A stretch of 64,000 bases of DNA from Leucoraja erinacea. Its lineage: Eukaryota. The number at the start of each line of letters is the position of its first letter. The first letter of the stretch is position 1. The notes under the pieces are model-generated. The model did no database searches and was not told the origin of the DNA. It worked only from the letters and a program-made list of their open reading frames with translations. The stretch spans positions 10,974,001-11,038,000 of the forward strand of contig NC_073408.1 of assembly GCF_028641065.1 (NCBI RefSeq). The letters run 5' to 3'. The translations under genes and the position numbers were made by a program. Shown here piece after piece: positions 22,901-59,321 of the stretch.

Positions 22901-25464
22901 CTCCTCCACCGCTCCGGACCGGCCATCCTCCGCGACATTTCTGAGTCGACACCCGAATGTCTCTTCGTTGGAGGCCGCTCCTCGTCAACGACGACTGAGC
23001 TGGTAAAGGTCGGGTTATGCAGTCAAATACTTGCACCTGAAGGTTGACACACACCCCAACATAAAATAACAAACACTACATAAAAACACAGACAAAAAAT
23101 AATAAAAACGCGGACAGGCTGCAGAGGCCGCTGCTGGCCAGAGCCGCGCCGCCTACCGGAACATCATAATCGTAATTTATTAGCCAAGTATGTTTTGCAA
23201 CATGCGAGGAATTTGGTTTGCGATACAGTCATACCAAAGAAGTATTTGTAAAAAATTCTATCCAATGTTTGCTCTTGCTGGGGTGAGTGTTGTTTGAATT
23301 TTGCATTAGATTATAGCGTAAGCAATGCCAGCTTTGAGCATTTCACTGCATTCCTCTCGTATGTGTATGTGATCACAAATACCCAACTTGAGGACATTTC
23401 TGACTTGCACAATATCTGGCTGACTGTTATGCAGTATACCTCTGAAGAAATGCAGAGGATGCCTATGACTTCTTCAATCAAATGTTTTTAAGTTGTAGAT
23501 CGTGAATTCAAATGTTAGTGCCAAGATTCATTCCAGTGTTGATTCAGCCAAAGTTTGAGGGATTAAGGGGAACGTTATAAATAAAATGGAAGTGTATCTC
23601 CTGTCACTTGGAGAATTTTCATGGGGACAGCCATAAAAATGCCAAATAAAGAAATAAATATTATCGCAACGTTTGGCTCCTGCAAAGACCCAGGCCAGGA
23701 TCCATCGGGACTTGCATTTTAGTGAACATGATGTTTATTGATAGTGAATAGATGCATTGTGTAGGAAATTGATTCATCCAGATATGTTGTATTTCATGCA
23801 AGAGATGGTAGAATCTGTAAATGTAGGACGTGACTATATCAATGAACAATATTTTGTAAAACCACAAGCATAATCAAGCATTACTAATTAGCATACGTCT
23901 GTGCAGGTCAGAACATATGCTGGCAAGCGACTGATTGACATGTTTCTTTTGGAGATTATGTTGAAGGCTTTGGGAAATGAAGGGAGAGCATTCTCTGAAG
24001 AGGTTGAGCTGGACAGGATGTTAGACAGTAAGTTCTATTCTACTCACACCCACACACAACAGAAGGCTTGGGATAAGCAACTAACAATGTACTGACAATG
24101 GAGCAACAGTGCTGCATCTAGGGCTTTCACATTTTCTGCCCACATGCTGAGTTTATTGTAATATGACGCCAAAGGTTTCCCAGCAAAGGATGAGGGAAAT
24201 ACGAGTGCTTATGAGATTCCATCCTTTCCTCTGTATCTTTTGTGTTGCTGAGGACATGTTGCAGAATTTGCAGCCCAAAACCCAGACTATAATGTCGAAA
24301 AGATGGCAGGATGTGAAGAAATGGGGGGGGGATTCTATTTGGAAATACTAATTGATTTATAATTGCACTGAAGCGCAAGAGTTCATAACTTCCAGTCAGC
24401 TGAGAATGATATCACTGCAACAGAGCTGAGCAGGTGTATTCTCAAGCAAGTTCGCAATGAATGTTTCGTTTATTTTGTCACAGGATCTTTCTTTGCTGGT
24501 TGATAGCTGAGAAGAGTTACCTCATCCTTTTTCAGGTTCAATGCTTGACATCCTTTTGGACCAGTACCTCAACATCAGCCATTCCAATTGTACAACCATT
24601 GACAATGTGGCACTGAAGGATTACCATGTGAAGGCTTTTACTGATGTGGTGAGTCCATATTTTTTACAACTGATTCCCACTATTTCCTTTTGGGATGTTA
24701 AATCCTTCCCCTTCTGTAAAGCCATTATTTTTCTCAATAATAATTTTCATTTATTATTTTTACAATTATCAAGGCAGGGGATTAAAAAAAAACAATTTGC
24801 ACTTCCAGTATCCCTTAGCAGCAACAAGCTAGCTGCTCTACACTACATACCCAAATACCCTTAGAACAAATACAGCACAAGTTATGTACAATAAAAATCC
24901 CTCGAGCTTCAAACCTGATTTCCAATAATCTACTCCAGACTTAGTTCAGTTCCCACCCTGATTATACATGGACACATGGTCACTTTGAACTAGCTTGATA
25001 AGTTAAAGTAACAACAAACCGCTAAGAAGCTTATTGTGCCGGATTGTGCAGCATCTGTGGATTGACGACATTTCAGGTCGGAACATGCAGTGTGAAACCA
25101 AAGCATTATCTCTCTGTTTCCGTCTACAAATACTGCCTGACCCGCTGAGTTCCTTCAGCAGTTTGATTTTTGCTCCAGATTCCAACATCTGCAGTCTCTT
25201 GTATCTCTTGACACACTATGGGCTTTTTGACGTTGCATGTGCATTGAATGTTATGAGGAGAAAATAGGAATTCTATGGTGTAACGCTGCCCACCACCCTG
25301 CAGTGAGATTGTCAGTGAATTAATGATTGCCCTCTGTTTATCTTGAACAGGCGCTCAATGTGATCCTGACAGAAATGAGTGAACATATGGACGAGGACAT
25401 GGCTGATCTTTTCGAGTATGAAAGACAAGTAGAGACTTCATTGAAGAGTAATGAAGTTGGATGA
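7869..25464 (+). CDS. Multi-exon gene for an uncharacterised ~410-450 aa acidic, helical protein (whole coding span)
   Basis: Phase-consistent exons: 7869-7915, 10608-10700, 12444-12567, [13950-14080], 14667/14681-14744, 16369-16500, 19851-19906, 21013-21217, 22283-22429, 23907-24027, 24536-24648, 25351-25464 (TGA). Joined frame is open: 448 aa with exon 4, 409 aa without. Confidence 0.8.
8442..8531 (+). mobile_element. Short Penelope-like/hammerhead insertion nested in a SINE
   Basis: CTGAAGAAGGGTTTCGGCCCGAAACGTTGCC core. 17-bp TSD TACATAGATCACGTGTT at 8425-8441 and 8532-8548. Confidence 0.75.
8765..9030 (-). mobile_element. HE1-like tRNA-derived SINE
   Basis: Reverse complement of the SINE at 42600-42925 (tttagagatacagcgcggaaacaggccct...gcagcaactctacc). 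Confidence 0.7.
10140..10481 (+). mobile_element. CR1/HER1-type LINE 3' end
   Basis: Encodes the CR1 RT C-terminus (TRGHSLRI...[14 protein letters not shown]) and ends in TTTCTATG tandem repeats. Confidence 0.9.
10608..10700 (+). CDS. Uncharacterised gene, exon 2 ([31 protein letters not shown])
   Basis: Acceptor cttttag; GC-type donor AG|GCAAGG; phase 2/2. Confidence 0.6.
12444..12567 (+). CDS. Uncharacterised gene, exon 3 (LNKEDAPSK...DHPLQ)
   Basis: Acceptor ctttcattgtgcag; donor CAG|GTAAGA; phase 2/0. Confidence 0.65.
13150..13770 (+). mobile_element. Old degenerate LINE fragment
   Basis: Similar to a second diverged copy at ~38700-39270 and to minus-strand ends at ~1690-2030 and ~37585-37730. 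Confidence 0.5.
13950..14080 (+). CDS. Uncharacterised gene, possible exon 4 ([22 protein letters not shown]...TSIR)
   Basis: Open frame, phase 0/2, but a weak acceptor (gcaatcttag) and weak donor (AG|GTTAAA). Confidence 0.4.
14120..14300. mobile_element. Penelope-like inverted repeat with hammerhead-like cores
   Basis: Minus strand reads CTGAAGAAGGGTCTCGACCCGAAACGTCACCC. Plus strand reads GGGT-CTGAAGA...GAAACATC-ACCC, giving a GGGT/ACCC stem I. Confidence 0.65.
14667..14744 (+). CDS. Uncharacterised gene, exon 5 ([26 protein letters not shown])
   Basis: Acceptor ttgtttttag (alternative at 14681); donor AGG|GTAAGA. Confidence 0.6.
15626..16239 (-). mobile_element. CR1/HER1-type LINE, 5'-truncated
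   Basis: ORF 15719-16090: [29 protein letters not shown]...WNSLP; catagaaa tail repeats. Confidence 0.9.
16369..16500 (+). CDS. Uncharacterised gene, exon 6 ([44 protein letters not shown])
   Basis: Acceptor tttgactgcag; donor AAG|GTACTG; 132 nt, phase 0/0. Confidence 0.75.
16910..17083 (+). mobile_element. CR1 LINE 3' tail fragment
   Basis: GIKGYGEK...aatggcctactcctgcacc tail. Confidence 0.8.
17929..18200 (+). mobile_element. CR1 LINE 3' end
   Basis: [21 protein letters not shown] followed by the CR1 tail. Confidence 0.85.
19851..19906 (+). CDS. Uncharacterised gene, exon 7 ([19 protein letters not shown])
   Basis: Strong acceptor tttttttcccccag; GC donor CG|GCAAGT supplies the phase 2 needed by the next exon. 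Confidence 0.7.
21013..21217 (+). CDS. Uncharacterised gene, exon 8 ([25 protein letters not shown]...IIPILPQI)
   Basis: Acceptor ttttacag; donor ATT|GTAGGT; lies inside ORF 20876-21259. Confidence 0.8.
22283..22429 (+). CDS. Uncharacterised gene, exon 9 ([17 protein letters not shown]...YEQQLGE)
   Basis: Acceptor cctcacag; donor GAG|GTAAGA; phase 0/0. Confidence 0.85.
22470..23162 (-). mobile_element. GC-rich non-autonomous retroelement, probably Rex1-associated, in intron 9
   Basis: Minus-strand head TTCCGGTAGGCGGCGCGG at ~23161, CpG-rich body, and a tail (ccaagtatgttttgcaaca...gaatttggtttgcgat) repeated at ~23186-23270. Confidence 0.5.
23907..24027 (+). CDS. Uncharacterised gene, exon 10 ([22 protein letters not shown]...RMLDS)
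   Basis: Acceptor tctgtgcag; donor A|GTAAGT; phase 0/1. Confidence 0.85.
24536..24648 (+). CDS. Uncharacterised gene, exon 11 ([13 protein letters not shown]...[10 protein letters not shown])
   Basis: Acceptor cctttttcag; donor GTG|GTGAGT; phase 1/0. Confidence 0.85.
25351..25464 (+). CDS. Uncharacterised gene, last coding exon ([37 protein letters not shown])
   Basis: Acceptor tttatcttgaacag; phase 0; TGA at 25462-25464. Confidence 0.8.
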   Translation, partial: ALNVILTEMSEHMDEDMADLFEYERQVETSLKSNEVG

Positions 25465-31525: not shown

Positions 31526-34500
31526 GGGGGCGCCAGTGTACAGCGGATGGAGGAAGACGAGCTTTAAGGAGCTCCCATCCGTTCGGTTTAAAATTGTTTA
31601 AAATCACCATCTTTCACTCAAGGTCGCTCTCAGAACTTTTCACAGCCTGTTTATCCACCTCGGTGTGGTACAGTCCTGCATAAAAAGCCCAGTAAATGCC
31701 AAACACATTCAAGGGAAGAGCTAAACAAAAACCGCTAGCAACCTTGGCTAACAAAGTTGAAGATAGTGACTTTAATAGTCATAGCAAGCGGCCATTCCAC
31801 ACCAACAGGTGCAATGCTGAGAGAGATGTCAGGTGCAATTTTAAAGGCCATCAACGACCGCTTTGATCAATTTGAGACCAAGTTTGCATCTCTTCAGTCC
31901 TCACAAAATGCCTTGATGGTCCGAATGGATTCCATGGATGAGATCGCTGGAGAGCATGACACCCGCCTGACACTAATGGAGAAAAACATAAGCGAAATAC
32001 AAAGGGAAAACACCCTCCTGCGAGCAAAAATCAACGACCTAGAGGGCCGTTCGCGTCGAAATAACATTAAAATCGTGGGTATTCCAGAAGGGGAAACCAA
32101 CAGAGTTTATCCGCGCCCTCATCCCAAAACTGCTGGATGAGACACACTTCCAAAAACCACTTATCATTGACCATGCACACCGCACCCAACAGCCGAAGCC
32201 CACGGAGGGAGCCAGGCCTCGCACACTCATCGCCAGGGTCCATTTCTTTCACGAGAAAGATATGATAATACAACTTGGTCGACAACGGACAGCTAGTCTT
32301 TATCTTCCTGGATTTGTAAGAATATTCCATTTCAACTTGTTTCAATGGTTACAGACCCAAATGGCAGATATATTATGATCACTGGAAATATTAATTCACT
32401 TCCTGTCACACTACTGAATATATACGATCCAAACATTGATGATCTAAATTATTTCCGTAAAGTGTTCGACTTAATTCCAGACCTCAATACCACCAATTTG
32501 CTAATGGGCGAAGATTGTTACCTTGACCCATATCTTGACTGGCTCTCCATCCACAAGCCCACCCGCAATAGCATCTGTTCAAAATTAAACAACCTGATTA
32601 AGTCTCGCAATATTGTTGATATCTGGAGGATACAACATCCAACGGACAAAGACTTCATTTTTTTCTCATGTCCACAAATCACACACAAGAATTGATTATT
32701 TCCTAGTGGATGCAAAATTAATATCTAGCATTGAACATACCAAATATCATAATAGAAACATAGAAATTAGGTGCAGGAGTAGGCCATTCGGCCCTTCGAG
32801 CCTGCACCGCCATTCAATATGATCATGGCTGATCATCCAACTCAGTATCCCGTACCTGCCTTCTCTCCATACCCCCTGATCCCCTTAGCCACAAGGGCCA
32901 CATCTAACTCCCTCTTAAATATAGCCAATGAACTGGCCTCAACTACCCTCTGTGGCAGAGAATTCCAGAGATTCACCACTCTCTGTGTGAAAAAAGTTCT
33001 TCTCATCTCGGTTTTAAAGGATTTCCCCCTTATCCTTAAGCTGTGACCCCTTGTCCTGGACTTCCCTAACATCGGGAACAATCTTCCTGCATCTAGCCTG
33101 TCCAACCCCTTAGAATTTTGTAAGTTTCTATAAGATCCCCTCTCAATCTCCTAAATTCTAGAGAGTATAAACCAAGTCTATCCAGTCTTTCTTCATAAGA
33201 CAGTCCTGACACCCCAGGAATCAGTCTGGTGAACCGTCTCTGCACTCCCTCTATATAATATATTGATATCAGACTACAGTCCAGTATTCCTAGACTTGAA
33301 CCTTGCTCTGCCTAAACAAAGCTATTGTTGGTGCTTTGACCCGTATTTGCTCACAGACCAAGTGTTTATTGACTTTTTGACAGCAAGGCTGGTCCTTGAG
33401 ACCAACGATACGGGGGATGTATCAGATTCTACGCTCTGGGAGACCCTTAAGGTAGTAATGAGAGGTCATATAATATCCTATGAAGACTCCAAAAAAAGGG
33501 AACAGCGTCATCAATTGGTAGAAATTAAAAATGCACTTCTAACTCTTGAACAGACTTACAGGAACTCTCTCTTACAAGAGGATTACAACTAAATCTTGAA
33601 TTTAAAATATGAATATAATCGCATTCTTAGTGGAAATGTTTGCAAGCTTCTACTCAAGCTCAGACAGAGACACTTTGAGTTGGGCGATAAACCGAGAGAT
33701 GCTGCTGGCCACTCAATTAAAAGGGGAACAGGCGAGTCATGCAATCCATAAAATCAAATCCAAAACAGGTGATTTGCTTACCAATCCTAAAGAAATAAAC
33801 AACCGCTTCAAAGTATTTTATTCAGAATTATGTACTGCTAAACCTCAGGCCGCTAATGCAGATTTTGCAGGTTTCTTTGACTCCCTCAGTTTGCCAAAAC
33901 TAGATGAATCAGCCAGGCTAGAACTGGATTCAAATTTCTTAGAAAGCGAGCTAGTTGAGGCTATTAAATCTTTTCCCTCCGGTAAAGCAGCTGGCCCGGA
34001 TGGATTTGGTTGTGAATTCTACAAGGCATTCCATAAGTCGCTTGTCCCACTCCTAATTAGGATGATCAATGATTCGATTAAGAATAACAGGTTTCCGAAT
34101 TCTCTGTATGAGGCAAATATACGTATCCTGTTAAAAAATGACACGGATAAAACTGAAGCTGGCAGCTATAGGCCTATTGCTCTCCTCAACCTTGATCAAA
34201 AGGCTGTCACAAAAATATTAGCTAAAAGACTGGGGAAGCATGTTTCATCAATTATACACCCTGATCAGACAGGGTTTATTCCAGGTAGATTTTCACTTTG
34301 TAATGTTGGGGGGATTCCAGAGCGGCCATCTTATCCTTAGACGCCGAAAAAGCGTTCGACCAGATAGAGTGGTCCTATATGTTAGAGGCACTTAAAAGAT
34401 TTGGGTTTGGGGATTCCTTTATTGCGTGGGTCAAAACGGTGTATCTTTGTCCGACATCATCCATCCTCACTAATAATGATAAATCCGGACCTTTTGACTT

Positions 34501-34735
34501 ACAACGTGGGGTCAGACAGGGAGATCTTCCATCCCCCTTACTCTTTGATATTGTTCTGGAGCCTCTCGCAATAGGTATCAGGCGTCACCCAAACATCAGG
34601 GGTATGAAGGTGGGGAACGTGGAAAGTGTGTGGGGCTTTACGCCGATGACACATTATTATATCTCTCCTAGCCAGGAGCCTCTGTTCCCCCCTTGTTAGA
34701 TTTTATTAAATCATTTGGCAAGCTTTCTGGATACA
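31526..34735 (+). mobile_element. Decayed L1-clade LINE (ORF1 plus partial ORF2), interrupted by a CR1 and truncated by a SINE
   Basis: ORF1 coiled coil with DLEGRSRRNNIKIVGIPEGE. Endonuclease motif DPNGRYI. RT motifs KAAGPDGF, SYRPIALLN, HPDQTGFIPGR, RGVRQGD and YADD (~34640). Many frameshifts and stops. Confidence 0.9.
32755..33254 (-). mobile_element. Young CR1 LINE inserted into the L1 ORF2
   Basis: CR1 RT C-terminus ORF 32842-33105. TSD ATAATA at 32749-32754 and 33255-33260; removing it restores the L1 reading YHNILISDYSP. Confidence 0.9.
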
Positions 34736-45597: not shown

Positions 45598-46104
45598 TCA
45601 TGATCTGAGCTGAGGGAGATTGTTCTCCTGCCAAGAGTCACGCTGCTAAAACACCGGAAATGGGCAGGGTTTCCATGCCTACAAGGATAGCTGCACCAAA
45701 TGTTACAAGCAGATTGGAAGTTTAAAGAGCAAGAGGAGTTGGTCCATTGGATTCTATAGTGTGTGTGAATGAGTGAGGTTTTGCCTGTTGGGATTATGTG
45801 CGGATCTGGAATGTATTCAACCAAAGTCGACGTTAAATGTGTTGGACAACTTTAGGAGAGAGCTGTTTTCCTCCAGTGACTTTGCTGCTGATACTTATAT
45901 CAGTCCAAATGGTTATGGATTACATTGAACGGTCAACAAATTCTCATTATCCAGGTCAAAAACATCAAAGTGTAAATGAGTAACTGTAGTCTGAAACTAT
46001 AAAGAGACCGAAATAAATTTGCATAGCATTTTAGATGTTAAATATGAGTAAATCGCAGGTTTTCGTTTCCATTCAGAGATAGATCGTACCTTGAAACATC
46101 CACC

Positions 46105-46150
46105 ATGATGATCAAGACAACTGTGATTTCAATCATCCTCACAATCTCGG
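46105..46150 (+). CDS. Apolipoprotein-like gene, signal-peptide exon
   Basis: MMIKTTVISIILTIS-G; donor G|GTTTGT, phase 1; possible upstream acceptor at 46076/46077. Confidence 0.75.
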
Positions 46151-49100
46151 GTTTGTATCTTTAATTTTCCTCTGGTTATTTGGTGTGGTACCTGATCTAA
46201 AGATAGGTTTTTGTACCATTCTCAGAACCACTAGAAAATGGTTCTGAGAATGGTACAAACTCAGCACACATCTTCACCGTATTCCAATACCCAATTGCAA
46301 TTACTGAGCCCATCTTTCCATCTTCATTACTCTGCACCTAGCAAACCCTGATATCAGTTTGATCTCCTTCGGTATAATGCATCAAGCCAGGCACACAACA
46401 GGAAAATATCTCTCAAGGGCAGTTGTAGAAACATAGAAAATAGGTGCAGGAGTGGGCCATTCGGCCCTTCGAGCCAGCACCGCCATTCATAATGATCATG
46501 GCTGATCATCCAACTCAGTATCCTGTACCTGCCTTCTCTCTATACCCCCTGATACCTTTATCCACAAGGGCCATATCTAACTCCCTCTTAAATATAGCCA
46601 ATGAACTGGCCTTCTGTGGCAGAGAATTCCAGAGATTCACCACTCTGTGTGAAAAAATGTTTTTTTCATCTCGGTCCTGAAAGATTTCCCCCTTATCCTT
46701 AAACTGTGACCCCTTGTTCTGGAACTTGTGTTTAATAACTTGGTGCATAAATTGGAAAAAGTACAAGTGGTTATTCTTTAACAGGCAAGTTTATAACAGA
46801 GGGATGCAAAAAGAAGAGTAGTATGAATGAGAGGAGGATTAGGTCATTGTTAAATGATCTGGGGTATATAACAGGTGGGTGTGTCATAAATTGGTTTGAC
46901 ACAGGTGGGATTAAGCAGGCAATATACACCGGGCAGGTACACCAGGCAAGTGTTCAACAGACTGGTCCTAGATAGGCTGTTACTGAATAAATAACACTGC
47001 CTGGTATTAAATGAACACGTAAATACTGTTGGGGGTACAGCAGTTGGATGTACAACTGGTGTTATTAAGTGAGCAGTTATGTAGTAGATGGGTGTTTAGC
47101 AAGTGATCAGCATAATACTGTGTGCCTAACTCTTCCACTGAAGATTAATTGCTCTCAATACACCTTCAGGTAACCTGCATGTGACAGTCCGGTAGCTAAG
47201 ATACAGAATTATAGAACAATTACAGAATTACAGCAAAGCCATGATGTTAACACACAAACAGCCTTGTGAAGCAAAGGGCTTTGTCTCTGCTCTCAGGGCC
47301 AATTCATAACCTAGAACAAACCATGTCCGTGAAGTAAACTATAGGTTTGTTTAGACACAGAATGCTGGTGTAACTCAGCATCTCTGGAGAAAAGGCATAG
47401 GTGACAATTCGGTTAGAGGCCCTTCATCAGGCTGTCATAATCAGACTGTTTAAATCATATAGATTTTTTTTTAATTGTGCTCCTGCTCTATTCCTCCCAT
47501 TTCCTTTCTCTCCGAAGGCTCGTTGGCCCATGAAGAAGATCAGCTACTAAGTGCTTTGACTGAATGCATCAAGGAATTGAAGAACGATGCCAAAGATGGT
47601 GCAGACCTGATCCAAGGTTCAAATGTTGACCAGCGACACCTGTGAGTACCAGATGTGAGGTGGGGTGACTGGCACTGGCTGGGATCCTGTTAAAAGAAAT
47701 GGCAAAAATATTGAATAAGAAAAGTTGGTACATCAAATCTAAATTGGTCGGCCTACAAAAATTGATCAGACTCTGCAAAGTGAATGGATTGAGCCAGCTT
47801 CAGTTATTGAGTGGAAGGGAATGATCTGCAAATGGTTGTTAAATGAATGGGTGTTTGTTGGTGTAGGCCATTAGGCCCCTTGTGCTTTCTCTGTCATTCA
47901 ATACTATTATGATCCATCTCCTGCCTCAACACCATATTCCCATACCCACTATCAGCCGATTGTGTTGAAAAATCAATCCATATCGTTCTTAAATGAATTC
48001 AGTGATCTGCCCTATGCAGTTGTCCATAGTAGTGAATTTCACAAAATCAGTGCAAAAATGTTCCCTCATCTCAGTCTTAATGTTTTATCTTATATCCCAA
48101 AGTTCTCGTCAACTCAGCTAGGATTAAACAAAGCTATCAGGGATTTATGATAAACAAATCATGTATGATAAATGTACTGATGTATTTGGAGGCTACAACT
48201 GGTAGAGTATCCAGCGGATGTGGTGTGTTTGGATTTTTTTATGACCTCTGATAAAGTCCCATGTAAGTGGCAACTACACTGGATTGAGGGCAATGTACTA
48301 GCACAGACTGAAAATTGTCTCACAGGCAGGCAGCAGAGAGTAGGAATTAGAGGTGGTACAGCAAGGAACAGTGTCTGTTTAATTTAGTTTAGAGATACAG
48401 CGCAGAAAAGGCCCTTCGGCCCACCGAGTCCACACCAACCAGCGATCGTCAAACATTAACACTATCCTACACACACTAGGGACAATTTATACCAAGCTAA
48501 TTAACCTACAAACCTGTCGCCTTTGCAGTGTGGGAAGAAACCGAAGATCTCGGAGAAAACCCACGTGGTCACAGGGAGAACGTACAAACTAGATACAGAC
48601 AGTACCAGTAGTCAGGATCGAACCCGGGACTCTGGCGCTGTAAGGCAGCAACTCTTCCACTGCACCACCTTGGACCCCAAGTATTCACAATATATATTTG
48701 TGATTTGGATCAGGGAGCTGGGTGAGTCTGCGTCTGCCAGTAAAATGAAACTGAGTGGGATTGTGAGCTATGAGAAAGGTGGTAAAAGGTTTCAGGCCAA
48801 TTTAGACAAGTTGAGTGAGCAGACATTCTTGGGAGATGTCGTAAAATATAGATAGTGTGAAAAGAGGATAGAAAGTAACTCAGCGGGACAGGCAGCATCT
48901 CTGTGGGAACATGGATAGGTGACATTTCCAGACTTTGTGTCTATGTTTTGAAAATCAGCATCTGTAGTTCCTTGTGTCTACGTAGATGGTGTGAAGTTAT
49001 CCTCTTTGGTACGAAAAATACAAAGGCAGATTATTGCTTAAATGAGAATAGCTTAGGTAGTGTTGATGTACAATGGCATATGTATTCTCTTGCATACCAG

Positions 49101-51015
49101 TTACTCGAAGCAATCATGCCAGTGAGGCAAGCAGTTAAGAAGGCAAATGGTACATCGGCCAGTGCGAAAGGTTTTGAGTATAGGAGAAACAATGCCTCGT
49201 TCCAATTATACAAACCTTTGGTATAATTACAGTAGAATATTGTGTGCAATTTTAGTTTCCTTGCCTATGAAAGGGAAGAACTTGGTACAAAGATTCACCA
49301 GACCATATTCCAGATGGAAGGGTTCTTGCCAGAGGAGAATTTGTGTCATTCATGTTCATTGGAGTTTAGAAGAATAAAAAGACATCTCATTGAAACATAG
49401 ATAATTCTGTCACAGTGTTAGGGAACGAGTTCAGACATTTAGGATGGTAAGGAGGAGAACTTCTTCCTCTAGAGGTTAGTGAACCTATGGAATTCTCTAC
49501 CACAAAAGACAGCGAAAGTTAAGTCACTAAAGTTGCTTTAATAATTTGTTAAAATATTAAGGAGTTAAATATATTTAAGTAGGAGATTAATTTAGTTTAG
49601 AATGTACAATACAAGAAATTGGATATGCTGGTTTATACCAAAGATAGACTCAGCTAACCCGCTGAGTTATTCAAGCACTTGGTGTTTATATTTAGTTTAG
49701 TTTAGAGATACAGCCCTTTGGCCCATCAAGTCGCGTACGATCACCCCTAACACTAGTTCGATCTTACACACTAGGGACATGTTTTACAGAAGCCAATTAA
49801 CCTACAACCTGCACATCTTTGGAATGTGGGATAAAAGCAGAGCACCCGGAGAAAACCCACGTGGTCACAGGGAGACGGTACAAATTCCACTCAAAAAACA
49901 CCCATAGTTAGGATCGAACCTGGCACTGTCAGGCAGCAACACTGCCACTGCACAATTTCTTGACACAAAAAGCTTTAAAGGGTCCAAAGAGATAGCAGGA
50001 ATTTGTCATTGAGATAGGTAATCTGTCATGATTGTAGTCATGGCTTGAAGAGCCAAATGACCTACTCCTGCTATATTTCCCATGTATATATGTATCCATC
50101 ACCAAATTCCCACCACAGGCACTAACTGCGAGGATGTTAGGGTGATTTCACTCTCCGCTATGTTCTGCATCTTCATTAAGTATCCAGTTCATAGTCATAC
50201 AGGGTGGAAACAGGCTCAACCTGCCCACACCGGCCAGAATGTCCCATCTACACTAGTTCCACCTGTCTGCATTTGGCCCCATATCCTTTTAAACTTGTCT
50301 TATCCATGTACCTGTCTAAATGTTTCTTAAATGTTGCGATAGCGCCTGCCTCAACTACTTCCTCTGGAAGCTCGATCCATACACGTATCACCCTCTATGA
50401 GGTTATGACTCGAAATATCCAGTCACTAGGAAACTTCCAAGCAAAGCAAACTTTGAAACTCATCTCCTTTCCTTTTCTTGTTGCTTCCCCAGCATCACAC
50501 CGTACAACCCGAGTCTGGCTCTCCTCAGAGACAACTTTGAAACAAAGATGTCGGAGAGAACAGATGCTATTCAGCAGCAGTTTGCACAGCAGCTGGGCGA
50601 CCTGAGTGATAGGCTGTCAGCGGCCATCGAGAACGTGCGGCTGACGATGAGCCAGAACGTCGAAGCACTTTCGCAAAGGCTGACGCCCAGTGTCGAGAAA
50701 CCCAGCCCTCAACACAACAACACCAACAAACATCAGGGGCAGGTATCGAATCCCAACAACAAGGACCTTCCGAACAACACGGACAACGCTAAGGAGGTGA
50801 GGGATGTGCTGGGTCCATTCTTTCCGCAACTGCAAAAGAAAATCACGGAAGACATGGTCAACCAAGGTGTGTCAGCCCATGAGGGGGGGAACATGGACAA
50901 AGTTGACCAGGTCCTCGAGGAGCTGCTCAGCAAGTTGACTCCTATTCTTAAAGATACTTATAGAAAGGTGAGCCAAATGTCCAGCGAATTGGCCCTGAAA
51001 GCTTGTGTCAAATAA
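46105..51015 (+). CDS. Divergent apolipoprotein A-I/A-IV/E-family protein, 230 aa, secreted (whole coding span)
   Basis: Exons 46105-46150, 47518-47641 and 50493-51015, with the apolipoprotein intron phases 1 and 2. Kozak ccaccATG; signal peptide MMIKTTVISIILTISGSLA. Middle exon is 14/32 identical to the neighbouring ApoA-IV. AATAAA at 51254-51259. Confidence 0.85.
46426..46724 (-). mobile_element. CR1 LINE 3' end (intronic)
   Basis: [24 protein letters not shown] remnant and tail. Confidence 0.85.
47518..47641 (+). CDS. Apolipoprotein-like gene, middle exon (SLAHEEDQLLSALTECIKELKNDAKDGADLIQGSNVDQRHL)
   Basis: Long pyrimidine tract ending in aag; donor CT|GTGAGT; phase 1/2. Confidence 0.85.
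48380..48670 (-). mobile_element. HE1-like SINE inserted in an older CR1 fragment
   Basis: tttagtttagagatacagcg...aggatcgaacccggg...gcagcaactc. Confidence 0.75.
50493..51015 (+). CDS. Apolipoprotein-like gene, last exon (amphipathic helices plus Asn-rich insert)
   Basis: Acceptor ttgcttccccag, phase 2; includes ORF 50548-51015, ending KACVK*. Confidence 0.85.
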
Positions 51016-52098
51016 TTTGAGTGCAGAGGTAAGGATGAGGGAGAGAGAGAGACTTGTGATCCGAAAGGTGGTCCTTTACATCGGTAACTAACCAACTAAC
51101 TGAAAGCAAACCGTACGACTGTTAAATGCTTGAAAACAAAATCTGGAGTCGTACAACGAAGATCTCAGCATCACCATCAAACAGTAGGTAGAATCGATTG
51201 TTCACTTCAGTGGCGGCTACATAAAGGACAACAAAATCAAGGAGATCTCGCAAAATAAAATTCCCCCCGTGTACAAACGTCAATCAGCAGAATATTTAGT
51301 CTCAGCCTTCAGCTATGCCGATCTTCCAACACCAGCATTTAGAGAACTATAAGGAAACTAGAAAAGTGCATTACCAAACGACATCTTTGAACTGTGGAAT
51401 TGTTTTGAAACTCAAAATTGCTTGATGTTGTTAAAAGCCTTTTATCACCTTTCCAATTCATTTATTTGGGGGGAAAGGGTTGATTCTGGAGTCGTTATTT
51501 AAAAATTTCGAGCCTGCTTTGTAGAATGTGGATTGCTGAACTCCCTCTTCTGTATCTCTGCAATCTCCATCAGTCTTGTAACTTACTCTCTGTGATATCC
51601 TTTCTGATATGCAGCTGCAATTCTGATCTCGAGTAACCTTGAGTTTAAAGTATTCTAAAATTACTATCCATGCCATTGAGGTCCTGCAGTAAGTTTCGAA
51701 AATTTCCTTTTCAAAAGGAAGGAAACAAGCAAGGAAATTGACATAGTAATGAGCAAGGAGACAAACTACAACTGTATCAAATTAAAAGTTACATTTAGGA
51801 AAGTGTACAACTTGGAGAGAAGCTTGGGTTTGAAACTAATCGCCCGTAATAAACAGGAGAACCTGAAATGTTGACTCTCCCTTCACAAGTTCTGCAACCT
51901 TTTACATTTTACTTCAACGTTTGCAGTATTTTACTTTTAGACATAAGTTATTAGACAAAAAAACTTTAAAGGGAAAAGTATGGTGTGAATTACAAATGAT
52001 GAGTGTCCAAGCATTTCTTGTCCTTGTCCAACCGTCTGCAGTCAAATCCCCCTCTCATTTGTATATATCTATTACTTGCCAGGCATTGATTAGCCCCT

Positions 52099-52655: not shown

Positions 52656-53139
52656 ATAGAAACATAGAAAATAGGTGCAGGAGTAGGCCATTTGGCCCTT
52701 TGAACCTGCACCGCCATTCAATATGATCATGGCTGATCATCCAACTCAGTATCCTGTACCTGCCTTCTCTCCATACCCCCTGATCCCTTTAGCCACAAAG
52801 GCTACATCTAACTCCCTCTTAAATATAGCCAATGAACTGGCCTCAAGTACCTTCTGTGGCAGAGAATTCCAGAGATTCACCACTCTCTGTGTGAAAAATG
52901 TTTTTCTCATCTCGGACCTAAAAGATTCCCCCCTTCTCCTTAAACTGTGACCCCTTGGTCTGGACTTCCCCAACATCAGGAACAATCTTCCTGCATCTAG
53001 CCTGTCCAACCCCTTAAGAATTTTGTAAGTTTCTATAAGATCCCCCCCTCAATCTTCTAAATTCTAGCGAGTACAAGCCGAGTCTATCCAGTCTTTCTTC
53101 ATATGTAAGTTGTGACATCCCAGGAATCAGTCTGGTGAA
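52656..53139 (-). mobile_element. CR1 LINE 3' end
   Basis: ORF 52746-53009 is the CR1 RT C-terminus. Confidence 0.9.
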
Positions 53140-56455: not shown

Positions 56456-57365
56456 TTAGTTCTGCAGATTCTGCCAGAAGTCGTTCCATACAGTTGTGAG
56501 CTTGGTCTGAAGTTGCTGCTGAACGTTGCCTCCATTCAGGGCAAGTCCCTCTTGCATCTCCCTCACATTCTGACTGATGATCTTGTTCAGCTGCTCAGTG
56601 TAGGGGGCCACATTCTGATGGAACTCCTCGATTCTCTGGTTGATGTTGGTGTTGAGATTTTCGATGTATGGGGCCAGGTTCTGGTCCATGCTTCCCACGG
56701 TCTCGTTAAGTTTTAGCTTCAGTTCGGCGATGTAAGGGTTCAGCTTCTGGTTCAGATCTTCCACGTGTTCGTTGACCTTTGTCTGGAGCATCTCGGCAAA
56801 AGGCACCACCCTCTGGGTCATTTCTGCAATCTGCTGGTTCATCTTCAGCTGGACCTCTTCGGTGTAGGGAGCCAAACTACCGCGCAGCTCCTGGACATTC
56901 TCATCAAACCTGGAGCGAAACTCTTCAGCTTTGGCAACCACATTCTGCTTGAAGTTGTCCATATTTTCATCGATCGTCATCTGGAGCTCTTCAGCGTAGG
57001 GAGTCAGGGTTTCCCTCAGGTTCTCTGCGCTCACTTCCAGTTTGGCCTGAAGCTCTTCAGTGAAGGGAGTCAACCTCTGCCTAAGTTCCTCCGCATTCTT
57101 CTTCAGCTGTTGGCCAAGTTCTTCAGTGTAAGGTGTCAACCTCTGATGAAATTCTTCAATGTTATTGCTAATCGTCTGATGGACTTCATCAGCAAAGGGA
57201 GAAAGTTTGACTTTCAGGTCTTCCAGCTGTTCTCTTATCTGCTGGTGAAGGCTGTCAATGTCTACTGTCATCTTCTCACGAAGATCATCTGTCAAAGGAG
57301 TCAATTTCTGTCGGAGATCCTCAGCATAGTTATTGACACTCTGCAGATTCTCCTCGATAAGATGA
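56456..57365 (-). CDS. APOA4: ApoA-IV last exon (22-residue amphipathic repeats)
   Basis: Acceptor ctctcttttccag, phase 2; within ORF 56456-57454. Confidence 0.92.
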
Positions 57366-59321
57366 CTGGAAAAGAGAGACAAGTGTTTGTCAAACTTGTT
57401 ACAGAGAAGAGATACATTAAGACAGAGCTCAGCGTAAGTCTGTGACTGAAACAAATGCTTTACAGAGGGAAGCAGAGCTCAGGAAACGGAAGGACATTTG
57501 GATCAGGAAATCTGTTCAGGTTAATTCAGTATGTTTATTGGGAAGAGAGGTTAGGATTCTCCCAATGTCTTTCATTTATTCTGTCCTTTCCTAATTGGTA
57601 CAATTTGAGAGGAAAATAAAGAGTGCAGTGAAGCACAATGATTTGAATGCTTTACATTATCTGATTGTGGAAAGGCATTCACATTGATTGGTAAAACTCT
57701 ACAAGTAGTTAGGTAATAATGTTTTAGAGAGATTACTGAGGGGATGATTAACACTGCAAAGGTTATATACTCTTAGGGTTTTGAAACTAAACTAGCAATT
57801 CAAAGTAAATGAATTAACTTGTGCCAGTGCCTGCATTCACAAATGCCATTCCTATAACTGTATCTGTATTAGTCAAGTCAAGTCAAGTCAAGTTTATTTG
57901 TCACATACACATACGAGATGTGCAGTGAAATGAAAGTGGCAATTATTAATATTTCCAGCTGAACCTATTCATATCATTCCCCTATTTGTACCTGAACTTT
58001 CCACCCATGGAGATAGAGAGGCTGCTGGTCTAACAAATCCATGAAGACTGGCCTAATGATATCAGCTTCTGAATTCATTTCGCACTGAAGAGCATTTACA
58101 TTTTAGTGGTTAAATAAATTTGGAATTAAAAATATAGGTGTTGTTACTGGTGAGTGGATTGTCATAAAGACCCAGCTGCTTCACTAATGTCCTTTTTGGT
58201 CCATAGTTGAGATCTCACTGACTTCTTTAATTAGCCTATCAACAATTAGGGATGAACAATAATGTTCATAATCTAGAAAATTGAAAGAACCTCTCACAAT
58301 GTTACAAAGTTACTGTTTACAATTTTTTTCCTGACTCTTTAATTCTTCCTGGGGTAAAGAGGTTGAACTTTTCCAATTGCCCCTAACAAATCCCCAATAC
58401 TCACTTGAGTTGCTGGCTGACTTCTGAGCTTTGAATCAGTTCTACACCATCCCTGGCTTCCTCGGCCAATTGGTTGATGTAATTCCAGAAGGCTTCATGA
58501 ACCTGATCTCTGTTGTACTCAGCACGACAGTCTATGAGAAAGAAAGAATGAGATAATCAGAATGGGAAGACGAGAGGAACTTTCCCTGCATCCACTCCTC
58601 ATATGTGCGGCAGGGTGGGGTAGTGGTAGAGCTGTTGCCTTACAACTCCAGAGGCCCGGATTTGATCCTGACTACAGGTGCTGTCTGCATGGAGTTTGTA
58701 CGTTCTCCCCATGACCTGCATGGGCTTTCTTCGGGTGCTCAGGTTTTCTCCCACATGCCAAAGATATACAGGTGTGCAGGTTAACTGACTTGGTATAATT
58801 GTAAATTGTGCCTACTTTGTGTAGGATATTGTTAGTGTGCGGGGATCGCTGGTCGGCGCGGACTCGGTTGGCCGAAGGCCCTGTTCCCGTGCTGTATCAC
58901 TAAACTAAACTAAACTAAAATTACACAACAGATGGGCCACAAGACTTCACCAGATCCTGGTGACCACCAGTTTTCTTTACTGGAAATACTGCTGCGTGAT
59001 TCAAGGGTAAAATCCCTTGTCTTTAAATATATGGAAACTGGGCTTAACACAAAATCAGAATGGAGAGGAAGCAAGCTTCACCCAGCAAACTAATGTTGGA
59101 AGAAAGAACAATGCATGGGGCTCCAAAAGTCTGATCTGAACTTAATTCATATCCATATAAGTAGCATGAAGATCTTCAAGAAAGAATGCTTGAAAATCAT
59201 AAATGATAACAAAATCCCAATCACAGTCTAAGTGCAAGAAAACAGGGAATGAGGAATATTTGAAGCTGATACCTTGGACCAAGACTGCGGCAACAAGCAG
59301 GAGGATTGTCTTCGGAAACAT
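56456..59321 (-). CDS. APOA4: Apolipoprotein A-IV, 361 aa (whole coding span)
   Basis: Coding exons 59321-59273 (49 nt, MFPKTILLLVAAVLVQ), 58531-58405 (127 nt, DCRAEYNRDQVHEAFWNYINQL...EVSQQLN) and 57365-56456. Proline-punctuated 22-mers (PFADE, PYTEE, PYAEE...). Exon sizes and N-terminus parallel human APOA4 as recalled. AATAAA at 56282-56277. Confidence 0.85.
58405..58531 (-). CDS. APOA4: ApoA-IV middle coding exon
   Basis: Acceptor ctttctttctcatag; donor AA|GTGAGT; FWNY motif. Confidence 0.9.
58612..58920 (+). mobile_element. HE1-like SINE in an ApoA-IV intron
   Basis: Same family as 42600-42925, with (CTAAA)n tail. Confidence 0.8.
59273..59321 (-). CDS. APOA4: ApoA-IV signal-peptide exon (whole exon 59363-59273)
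   Basis: ccaccATG Kozak; donor G|GTATCA, phase 1. Confidence 0.88.

What the first reader, a model, noticed from the sequence alone, without database searches (positions are those of the whole stretch)
46105..51015. Divergent apolipoprotein paralog facing APOA4 tail-to-tail
Seen: three exons splice in frame into a 230-aa protein with a signal peptide (predicted cleavage SLA|HE). The introns have phases 1 and 2, as in the neighbouring APOA4. The middle exon aligns to APOA4 without gaps: DQLLSALTECIKELKNDAKDGADLIQGSNVDQ vs DQVHEAFWNYINQLAEEARDGVELIQSSEVSQ, 14/32 identical. The ORF track shows only the last 155 aa. Established: ApoA-I/A-IV/A-V/E share this exon architecture and a W-x-Y motif in that exon. 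Here the motif is lost, the 22-mer array is short and irregular, and the gene is inverted relative to APOA4. Inference: a lineage-specific, neofunctionalised exchangeable apolipoprotein that fits none of the standard A-I/A-IV/A-V/E/C classes.
Basis: partly seen in the sequence, partly recalled or inferred. Interest (0 to 1): 0.8.

Follow-up and report, generated by a model that had tools for sequence, protein, structure and literature searches.

The report
Short ApoA-IV-like apolipoprotein gene of skates
This is an intact three-exon gene for a short secreted lipid-carrier protein, an offshoot of apolipoprotein A-IV shared by skates, sawfish and rays, already predicted in public databases but never studied.

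Summary
Exons 46105-46150, 47518-47641 and 50493-51015 (+) have proper splice sites and intron phases 1 and 2. They add up to 230 codons, facing a 361-codon APOA4 gene tail-to-tail.

The gene is conserved. A public 230-aa prediction from Amblyraja radiata has the same structure. Orthologs exist in Pristis pectinata, Mobula hypostoma and Hemitrygon akajei at 41-49% identity.

It does not stand outside the standard classes:
- All non-family sequence hits are A-IV(-like).
- A profile of the four orthologs matches human ApoA-IV from residue 1 (E 2.8e-24). ApoA-I scores 5e-9 and ApoE 0.056.
- A small tree nests the family inside chondrichthyan A-IV-like genes.

Derived traits:
- It is about 130 residues shorter than the neighbouring APOA4.
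- The W-x-Y motif is lost in all four orthologs.
- A penultimate cysteine is invariant.
- Skates carry an Asn/Pro-rich linker.

Expression is unshown: four RNA runs gave zero reads on the exons. ApoA-V was not tested, and ApoA-I orthology was only weakly rejected.

Verdict: a real, divergent, truncated ApoA-IV paralog of modest interest.

The parts
45998..46003 (+). TATAAA box 107 nt upstream of the start codon (candidate promoter element)
   Evidence: Pattern scan. It was the only TATA-like site found in 45800-46104. Its function is not tested.
46105..46150 (+). Exon 1: start codon plus most of the signal peptide (MMIKTTVISIILTIS + 1 nt); followed by a phase-1 intron
   Evidence: donor GTTTGT. 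14 of 15 residues are identical to the Amblyraja radiata protein P0002.
46151..47517 (+). Intron 1 (phase 1), holding a high-copy retroelement fragment (about 46426-46766)
   Evidence: ORF 46515-46766 minus strand, with the repeat-typical ...GIRGYREKAGTGY tail. RNA reads pile on 46262-46804 only, most with loose ends that fit nothing here.
47518..47641 (+). Exon 2, 124 nt: end of the signal peptide, predicted cleavage SLA|HE, and the first amphipathic helix; W-x-Y motif replaced (L-T-E-C)
   Evidence: acceptor tract, donor GTGAGT. 39 of 40 residues are identical to P0002. 14/32 identical to exon 2 of the neighbour. Mean hydrophobic moment is 0.428 against 0.201 +/- 0.062 in shuffles; 2 of 500 shuffles reach it.
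47642..50492 (+). Intron 2 (phase 2), full of interspersed repeats
   Evidence: reads only on repeat stretches 48253-48976 and 49520-49881, with many 'goes back' joints and loose ends.
50493..51015 (+). Exon 3: 173 codons plus TAA. It encodes helical repeats, an Asn/Pro-rich linker (exon-3 residues 64-98, two NNT sequons), C-terminal helices and the conserved penultimate-region Cys.
   Evidence: Pfam PF01442 E 4.2e-13, 49.9 bits, below the cut-off of 90. 164 of 173 residues identical to P0002. Hydrophobic moment 0.307 against 0.205 +/- 0.026; 0 of 500 shuffles reach it. Sequons and Cys.
51254..51259 (+). AATAAA, the first polyadenylation-signal hexamer after the stop codon (about 240 nt downstream)
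   Evidence: Pattern scan; not tested.
59273..59321 (-). Neighbouring APOA4 gene, exon 1 (MFPKTILLLVAAVLVQ + 1 nt), phase-1 donor
58405..58531 (-). Neighbouring APOA4 gene, exon 2, 127 nt, with the FWNY motif; phase-2 donor GTGAGT
56456..57365 (-). Neighbouring APOA4 gene, exon 3 (302 codons + split codon + TAA), a regular proline-punctuated 22-mer array
   Evidence: ORF. (PF01442 250.1 bits, above the cut-off). (acceptor AG 57367-57366; 361 codons in all).

Best explanation
It is a functional three-exon gene for a short (230 aa) secreted exchangeable apolipoprotein. It arose by duplication and inversion of an ApoA-IV-like gene within cartilaginous fishes. It has been kept in batoids (skates, sawfish, devil rays, stingrays).

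Shown:
- the intact gene model, with the family's intron phases
- orthologs of equal architecture in four other batoid species
- closest sequence affinity to ApoA-IV
- significant helical amphipathicity
- derived traits, compared with the neighbouring APOA4: no counterpart of roughly its last 115 exon-3 residues, loss of W-x-Y, an invariant Cys two or three residues from the C-terminus, and in skates a decayed central 22-mer pair that is now an Asn/Pro-rich linker with two N-glycosylation sequons

Inferred mechanism:
- The signal peptide is cut near A19|H20.
- The mature protein of about 24 kDa binds the surface of plasma or yolk lipoproteins. It does so through two amphipathic-helix blocks, about residues 22-120 and 156-229, joined by a flexible linker.
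- The lone conserved Cys makes a disulphide-linked homo- or heterodimer, as in human ApoA-II. That comparison is recalled.
- It is probably made in liver, intestine or yolk-sac, like other family members.
For: Gene model:
- Splice sites, phases and 230 codons. TATAAA lies at -107 and AATAAA about 240 nt after the stop.
- The same protein is predicted independently: XP_032905635.1, 'uncharacterized protein LOC116991269 [Amblyraja radiata]', 230 aa. The window's exon 3 is 164/173 identical to it.

Orthologs:
- Pristis pectinata 'apolipoprotein A-IV-like' isoforms (49% identity), Hemitrygon akajei (41%) and Mobula hypostoma (225 aa).
- All are open throughout. 66 columns are invariant, including C228.
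- Synteny (upstream gene followed by this gene on one strand) is kept in the stingray. The exons of the fused model P0005 map to 9214-24648 and then 47496-51012.

Family:
- PF01442 at E 4e-13 to 1e-17 in all four orthologs' proteins scanned.
- The ESM Atlas's nearest clusters are all apolipoprotein A-I/E/A-IV.

A-IV affinity:
- phmmer over 1.84 billion representatives gave 6 hits at E<=0.001. Three are family members and three are A-IV or A-IV-like.
- The profile against PDB gave human ApoA-IV 2.8e-24 (positions 1-207 to residues 1-203), best ApoA-I 5.3e-9 and ApoE 0.056.
- By BLASTP, the best non-family partner of every member is the window's own APOA4 exon 3 (29-33% identity, 65-101 bits).

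Tree:
- Family clade 100/100. It is sister to a sawshark A-IV-like protein (92/88), inside a chondrichthyan A-IV-like group (96/94, then 84/85), with tetrapod A-IV apart (98/95).
- Holding the family with ApoA-I costs 10.1 lnL, p-AU 0.034.

Amphipathicity exceeds shuffles.
Against: - No transcript evidence. In 4 RNA runs (4 of the 12 raw-read RNA runs listed) depth was 0 in every bin covering the three exons; reads fell only on intronic repeats. This negative is weak. Tissues are unknown, only 5-32% of each run was read, and I had no positive-control gene on the stretch laid.
- All orthologs are below Pfam's gathering score (44.9-64.5 bits against 90).
- The tree has 14 rows, one ApoA-I as root, and no ApoE, ApoA-V or ApoC-III. 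Repeat proteins align ambiguously, the candidate branch is long, and the AU groups were named after seeing the tree. p 0.034 is marginal.
- The ESM Atlas ranks ApoA-I and ApoE clusters (0.93) marginally above A-IV-like ones (0.91).
- The AlphaFold model is unreliable (mean pLDDT 40.7), so helices and the disordered linker are only indicative.
- Lipid binding, secretion, glycosylation and dimerisation are all inferred.
Confidence: 0.68

Rival explanations
1. It is the fast-evolving batoid ortholog of another canonical class, not an A-IV-derived paralog. ApoA-I is the most plausible on size (230 aa) and cluster position. ApoE, ApoA-V or a proto-ApoC-III are less likely.
For: - Its size is ApoA-I-like. 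The ESM Atlas's top clusters by features are 'apolipoprotein A-I' (266 aa), 'A-I-2' (255 aa) and 'apolipoprotein E', all at 0.93, just above A-IV-like at 0.91.
- Liu et al. 2019 (PMC6854765, passages seen) report ApoA-I and ApoA-IV as the only classes in cartilaginous fish, so a gene next to APOA4 could be the A-I.
- Otis et al. 2015 (PMC4348566, passages seen) note that fish apoA-IV genes cluster with apoE.
- Its inverted orientation, convergent with an A-type gene, recalls human APOC3 facing APOA1. So does a 124-nt middle exon. Both of these points are recalled, not tested.
Against: - The profile scores human ApoA-IV 89.5 bits, against 39.5 for the best ApoA-I and 16.6 for ApoE.
- No ApoA-I or ApoE protein reached E<=0.001 in the exhaustive search of 1.84 billion representatives, while three A-IV(-like) proteins did.
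- The AU test disfavours placing it with ApoA-I outside all A-IV-like rows (p 0.034).
- No Pfam ApoC-III hit at E<=1 and no ApoC-III chain at E<=10 in PDB.
Confidence: 0.17
2. It is a decaying or silent duplicate in this species: an intact-looking ORF that is no longer expressed or used.
For: - Zero reads on all three exons in 4 RNA runs.
- The central repeats have degenerated to an Asn/Pro-rich stretch in skates.
- The exon 1 donor is weak (GTTTGT).
- The public contigs carrying the exact ORF look genomic, not spliced. The 51-aa member P0003 reads from intron into exon 2.
Against: - The frame is open over 230 codons here and in A. radiata, with only 11 amino-acid differences.
- Four further batoid species from different orders keep full-length open orthologs with 66 invariant columns.
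- The helical hydrophobic periodicity is preserved.
- The sawfish gene has three predicted isoform classes under many accessions. That usually reflects transcript support, but this is inference.
Confidence: 0.1

Closest known systems
Apolipoprotein A-IV (human APOA4; the skate APOA4 gene 5.4 kb away at 56456-59321, minus strand)
   Same: - Signal peptide in exon 1/2, intron phases 1 and 2, and middle exons of 124 vs 127 nt.
- Collinear alignment from Met1 to about residue 203 of human ApoA-IV, E 2.8e-24.
- 29-33% identity to exon 3 of the neighbour.
- Amphipathic helical repeats.
- A TATA box close to the ATG is compatible with A-IV's lack of a 5'-UTR intron. The A-IV feature is recalled; the transcript is not seen.
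   Different: - 230 aa against 361 aa (neighbour) and 396 aa (human precursor chain 9hx4_F).
- No counterpart of roughly the last 115 residues of the neighbour's exon 3.
- W-x-Y replaced by L-x-C/R/S in 4 of 4 orthologs.
- An invariant C-terminal Cys that the neighbour's exon 3 lacks.
- Below Pfam's gathering score.
- Opposite strand.
Lineage-specific ApoA-IV paralog expansions in teleosts (zebrafish apoA-IVa, b.1, b.2, b.3)
   Same: Local duplicates of A-IV-like genes that form their own subfamily, only loosely tied to amniote APOA4 (Otis et al. 2015, PMC4348566, passages seen).
   Different: The zebrafish paralogs are described there as expressed, diet-regulated genes. Nothing in the passages I saw speaks of a truncated, Cys-bearing form. 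The batoid gene has no expression data.
Small exchangeable apolipoproteins (ApoA-II, ApoC-III)
   Same: - Short secreted amphipathic-helix proteins thought to derive from the same ancestral gene structure.
- ApoA-II dimerises through a single Cys (recalled).
- Human APOC3 is the one inverted gene in the APOA1/C3/A4/A5 cluster (orientation recalled).
   Different: - No detectable sequence similarity: no Pfam ApoC-III or ApoA-II hit at E<=1 and no such PDB chain at E<=10.
- At 230 aa it is more than twice their size (sizes recalled).
Sawshark 'apolipoprotein A-IV-like' P0006 (Pristiophorus japonicus) and basking-shark LOC144691106 (P0007)
   Same: - Nearest non-batoid relatives: 29% and 27% identity.
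- P0006 shares the M-[IL]-[IL]-K-T-T-V signal peptide start and is collinear over residues 1-217.
- P0006 is sister to the family at 92/88.
   Different: - P0006 keeps the Trp (FWSD) and is 449 aa with an internal duplicated block.
- Its best BLASTP partner is the skate APOA4, not the candidate family.
- Orthology is therefore unresolved.

Membership tests
Exchangeable apolipoprotein A1/A4/E superfamily (Pfam PF01442) | Significant match to the family profile | tested here: inconclusive
   Exon 3 scores E 4.2e-13 but 49.9 bits, below the curated cut-off of 90. The orthologs score 44.9-64.5 bits, also below it. The family profile hits human ApoA-IV at E 2.8e-24, so homology is secure although Pfam's own threshold is not met.
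Exchangeable apolipoprotein A1/A4/E superfamily (Pfam PF01442) | Shared gene architecture: an intron inside the signal-peptide codons (phase 1) and a second intron early in the mature protein (phase 2), with one long last exon | tested here: met
   Candidate exons 46/124/520 nt and neighbour exons 49/127/907 nt, with identical phases.
Exchangeable apolipoprotein A1/A4/E superfamily (Pfam PF01442) | N-terminal secretory signal peptide | tested here: inconclusive
   By eye there is a Lys, then a hydrophobic core TTVISIILTI, then SGSLA|HE with small residues at -3/-1. It aligns to the ApoA-IV signal peptide. No signal-peptide predictor was available.
Exchangeable apolipoprotein A1/A4/E superfamily (Pfam PF01442) | Amphipathic alpha-helical 11/22-mer repeats | tested here: met
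   Mean 18-residue hydrophobic moment at 100 degrees is 0.307 (exon 3) and 0.428 (exon 2). Shuffles give 0.205 and 0.201; 0 of 500 and 2 of 500 shuffles reach the observed values. Proline punctuation is regular in the ray orthologs and broken in skates.
Apolipoprotein A-IV (orthologs of human APOA4) | Closest sequence affinity to ApoA-IV among apolipoprotein classes | tested here: met
   (details under Best explanation).
Apolipoprotein A-IV (orthologs of human APOA4) | One-to-one orthology with APOA4 | tested here: not met
   The adjacent 361-codon gene is the far better APOA4 counterpart (PF01442 250 bits; the QQLN|HLIEENLQSVNNYAEDL exon junction reads like human A-IV). The candidate is a separate 100/100 clade. 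It is therefore a paralog.
Apolipoprotein A-IV (orthologs of human APOA4) | Long array of about thirteen 22-mers (mature protein about 376 aa; figures recalled) | tested here: not met
   230 aa. The alignment to A-IV ends near its residue 203. There is no further A-IV-like coding remnant after the stop (tblastn at E<=10).
Apolipoprotein A-IV (orthologs of human APOA4) | W-D/N-Y motif in the middle exon | tested here: not met
   Present in human A-IV (vmWdYf) and in the neighbour (FWNY). Replaced in 4 of 4 batoid orthologs and in the window.
Apolipoprotein A-IV (orthologs of human APOA4) | Three-exon gene without the 5'-UTR intron of the other classes (feature recalled) | not testable with these tools
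   No transcript was seen. TATAAA 107 nt before the ATG is compatible. The sawfish isoforms with upstream coding extensions leave it open.
Apolipoprotein A-I | Groups with ApoA-I rather than A-IV | tested here: not met
   Profile bits are 39.5 (best A-I) against 89.5 (A-IV). BLASTP to the Galemys ApoA-I part gives E 0.03 to 6e-6, always weaker than to A-IV rows. AU p 0.034 against family + A-I. Only one, mammalian, ApoA-I was available, so the test is weak.
Apolipoprotein E | Sequence affinity to ApoE | tested here: not met
   The best ApoE chain scores E 0.056, 16.6 bits. No ApoE row could be put in the tree.
Apolipoprotein C-III | Match to ApoC-III sequence models | tested here: not met
   No ApoC-III family among Pfam hits at E<=1 for P0002. 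No ApoC-III chain among 33 PDB sequences at E<=10.
Apolipoprotein A-V | Sequence affinity to, or orthology with, APOA5 | not tested

The most novel reading that the evidence does not exclude
Cartilaginous fishes are reported to lack the small apolipoproteins (A-II, C-I to C-IV) of bony vertebrates (Liu et al. 2019, passages seen). Batoids may have made their own small apolipoprotein independently. They would have done so by truncating an inverted ApoA-IV duplicate and fixing a C-terminal cysteine. The result would be a disulphide-linked dimeric (ApoA-II-like) or regulatory (ApoC-like) lipoprotein component, with a glycosylated flexible linker in skates. That would be a convergent, datable origin of a 'small apolipoprotein' class.
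Probability: 0.2. Interest if true: 0.55.

Novelty: new variant of a known kind. Interest (0 to 1): 0.3.

Why it matters
Apolipoprotein evolution in cartilaginous fishes is described in print as just ApoA-I plus ApoA-IV (PMC6854765). This locus shows at least one more conserved lineage: a short, Cys-bearing, W-x-Y-less A-IV derivative shared by four batoid orders or families. It has so far appeared only as automatic predictions ('uncharacterized protein', 'apolipoprotein A-IV-like'). No paper in the searched library names these accessions.

If it is expressed on lipoproteins, it would be a natural experiment in how a long exchangeable apolipoprotein is cut down to a small one. It could also bear on lipid transport in animals that lack albumin-type fatty-acid carriage and store lipid in a huge liver (both points recalled). 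As it stands it is an annotation-level refinement, not a surprise for the field.

Tried and rejected
- Exon 3 alone against the 5.8-billion word-indexed collection found only its own cluster (1 of 104 candidates). Exon 2 alone has no Pfam family.
- The third homolog search, with a mixed A-IV alignment (A2), was meant to pull in ApoA-I, E and A-V. It returned 15 proteins. All the named ones are ApoA-IV: mammals plus one snake. The tree therefore has no ApoE or ApoA-V. Its single ApoA-I was cut from a fused mole model (P0014).
- The AlphaFold2 model on the 4-sequence alignment had mean pLDDT 40.7 and pTM 0.24. I did not run fold search on it, because a low-confidence model gives meaningless matches. 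The ESM Atlas structure hits (TM 0.34-0.48, bacterial helical proteins) are uninformative.
- The ESM Atlas search on the upstream gene's product (P0005 residues 1-385) gave no usable hit. The identity of that gene is unresolved.
- The ApoC-III idea (inverted orientation, 124-nt exon, both recalled) was rejected for lack of any sequence signal.
- A tblastn search for decayed A-IV repeats beyond the stop codon, or elsewhere in the window, found only the two known last exons.
- dN/dS could not be computed, because no ortholog DNA was obtainable.
- The search of earlier findings by words found nothing.
- The literature searches gave no paper on this gene. They might show whether a gene like this was counted as chondrichthyan ApoA-I or ApoA-IV.
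- The joined step was left out. The window's three exons were never joined, typed, translated as one or searched as one. Full-length searches used the public Amblyraja radiata protein P0002 instead.

Full report
WHAT IS THERE. I read 45900-51200 and translated the three proposed exons separately.
- Exon 1 (46105-46150) starts with ATG in a CCACCATG context. It encodes MMIKTTVISIILTIS plus one base and is followed by GTTTGT.
- Exon 2 (47518-47641, 124 nt) follows a polypyrimidine tract and AG. It ends before GTGAGT.
- Exon 3 (50493-51015) follows ...ttgcttccccag and runs 173 codons to TAA.
- The lengths are 46+124+520 nt = 230 codons, with intron phases 1 and 2.
- TATAAA lies 107 nt before the ATG. 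The first AATAAA lies about 240 nt after the stop.

They were searched piece by piece, and the joined step was left out.

THE NEIGHBOUR. The ORF at 56456-57454 (minus strand) is the last exon of a canonical ApoA-IV gene (PF01442 250.1 bits). I located its other exons:
- Exon 1 is 59321-59273 (MFPKTILLLVAAVLVQ plus one base, the same CCACCATG context).
- Exon 2 is 58531-58405 (127 nt, with FWNY).
- Exon 3 is 57365-56456.
- Together they make 361 codons with phases 1 and 2.

The two genes are convergent, with their stops 5440 nt apart. The ungapped 32-residue alignment of the two middle exons is 14/32 identical.

IT IS A CONSERVED GENE.
- Exon 3 alone found only its own cluster in the word-indexed collection.
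- That cluster holds XP_032905635.1, 'uncharacterized protein LOC116991269 [Amblyraja radiata]', 230 aa. It is the same three-exon product. It differs from the window at 1 of 15, 1 of 40 and 9 of 173 residues in exons 1-3. The window therefore comes from a close relative of that skate.
- With this public protein, an exhaustive phmmer search of 1.84 billion representatives gave only six hits at E<=0.001 (names):
  - the window's own ORF;
  - Pristis pectinata 'apolipoprotein A-IV-like' (49% identity, full length);
  - a Hemitrygon akajei fused model (41%);
  - a Pristiophorus japonicus 'apolipoprotein A-IV-like' (29%);
  - a Cetorhinus maximus uncharacterised protein (27%);
  - a vole ApoA-IV (23%).
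- A profile search added Mobula hypostoma LOC134340773, 225 aa (3 proteins at E<=0.01 among 5525 candidates).
- The four batoid orthologs align end to end without frame problems. 66 columns are invariant.
- The stingray fused model's exons map collinearly to 9214-24648 and then to 47496-51012 of the window. The upstream gene and this gene are therefore neighbours on one strand in both lineages.

WHICH CLASS.
- Pfam sees PF01442 in every ortholog (E 1.4e-11 to 1.4e-17), but always below the gathering score (44.9-64.5 against 90 bits).
- The four-sequence profile was searched against all PDB sequences. It gives human ApoA-IV at E 2.8e-24 (89.5 bits; profile 1-207 aligned to residues 1-203, signal peptide included). 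The best ApoA-I scores 5.3e-9 (39.5 bits) and the best ApoE 0.056. No ApoC-III or ApoA-II chain appears among the 33 sequences at E<=10.
- By BLASTP, every family member's best non-family partner is the window's own APOA4 exon 3 (29-33% identity, 65-101 bits). The alignment covers only about the first 190 residues of that exon.
- A 14-row maximum-likelihood tree was rooted on the single available ApoA-I, a slice of a fused mole model. It gives:
  - tetrapod A-IV 98/95;
  - a chondrichthyan group 84/85;
  - within that group, the candidate family (100/100) sister to the sawshark protein (92/88), then the basking-shark protein (96/94), then the skate APOA4.
- Forcing the family outside all A-IV-like rows, together with ApoA-I, costs 10.1 lnL (p-AU 0.034). 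Forcing the three other chondrichthyan rows into a clade without it gives p 0.013.
- These tests are post hoc, on few rows, with ambiguous repeat alignment and no ApoE or A-V. I read them as moderate support for an A-IV-derived paralog.
- The ESM Atlas places the protein among apolipoprotein A-I, E and A-IV clusters without discriminating (0.93 against 0.91).

DERIVED FEATURES.
- W-x-Y is replaced in all four orthologs and in the window (ALTEC, ALRDC, VLRDR, VLRDS). The sawshark relative keeps FWSD.
- A Cys two to three residues from the C-terminus is invariant (C228). It is absent from the neighbour's exon 3. Skate and sawfish have a second Cys in exon 2.
- In rays and sawfish the central part still reads as proline-punctuated 22-mers. 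In skates it is an Asn/Pro-rich stretch: 9 Asn and 5 Pro in 35 residues, with two NNT sequons. 7 of its 35 columns are invariant, against 24 of 63 in the helix before it and 22 of 75 in the C-terminal helices after it.
- Helical amphipathicity is significant: exon 3 has a mean moment of 0.307 against 0.205 +/- 0.026 (0 of 500 shuffles reach it). Exon 2 has 0.428 against 0.201 +/- 0.062 (2 of 500).
- The AlphaFold model is helix-linker-helix but unreliable (pLDDT 40.7). It was not used for fold search.

EXPRESSION.
- No listed holder of the stretch is an RNA run.
- I laid 4 of the 12 raw-read RNA runs offered (three studies). Depth was 0 in every bin covering the three exons. All reads sat on intronic repeats, mostly with loose ends.
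- Tissues are unknown, only 5-32% of each run was read, and no control gene lay on the stretch. This is a weak negative.
- The public contigs with the exact ORF look genomic: P0003 reads from intron into exon 2.

LITERATURE.
- Liu et al. [quoted passage not shown] Their supplements, which I could not open, may show how genes like this were counted.
- Otis et al. 2015 (PMC4348566; passages) describe lineage-specific apoA-IV paralogs in zebrafish.
- A nurse-shark plasma proteome (PMC9207270; passages) and a catshark transcriptome (PMC4362833; passages) mention A-I and A-IV, and A-IV and E, respectively.
- No paper in the searched library holds LOC116991269, XP_032905635, LOC134340773 or XP_051896039 (0 papers).

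VERDICT. This is a real, intact, conserved gene for a short secreted ApoA-IV-derived apolipoprotein of batoids. It is already present in databases as unstudied predictions.
- The claim that it fits no standard class is too strong.
- Neofunctionalisation is untested.
- Interest is modest. The bolder reading is an independently evolved, Cys-dimerising 'small apolipoprotein' of cartilaginous fishes. That remains possible and testable.

Noticed in passing
window 9214-24648 (+): A multi-exon gene for an acidic, helical protein with no Pfam family lies upstream on the same strand. Its stingray ortholog is fused to the apolipoprotein in the public model XP_072885941.1 (P0005). That fusion is probably a read-through or mis-joined prediction. 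The ESM Atlas gave no usable hit for it.
   Followed up: partly
window 46426-46766, 48874-48928, 32842-33105, 52746-53009, 15719-16090, 16582-16980, 17714-18025: A high-copy retroelement fragment recurs across the window. Its ORF tail reads ...[14 protein letters not shown]...[13 protein letters not shown]. Copies in the candidate's introns attract hundreds to thousands of RNA reads per run with loose ends. This reflects expression of other copies elsewhere, not of this gene.
   Followed up: partly
window 31757-34699 (+): A run of ORFs that looks like a decayed LINE-type element, with endonuclease/reverse-transcriptase-like translations. It was not scanned against any family library.
   Followed up: no
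protein P0006 (Pristiophorus japonicus 'apolipoprotein A-IV-like', 449 aa): The model contains an almost exact internal duplication of a block of about 75 residues (EISEEMELLREKLSPVAG...APQDVL). This suggests an assembly or gene-model artefact, or a very recent repeat gain. It matters for deciding whether this is the shark co-ortholog.
   Followed up: no
proteins P0007/P0011 (Cetorhinus maximus LOC144691106 and LOC144691094): Two nearly identical A-IV-like genes in the basking shark branch closer to the candidate family than the skate APOA4 does (96/94). This hints at a wider, unmapped expansion of A-IV-like genes in elasmobranchs.
   Followed up: partly
proteins P0004, P0009, P0010 (Pristis pectinata isoforms X1-X3): The sawfish models carry 21-113 extra N-terminal residues before the conserved MIIKTTV start. 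These are read in frame from upstream exons and the 5' leader, and are probably not part of the secreted protein.
   Followed up: no
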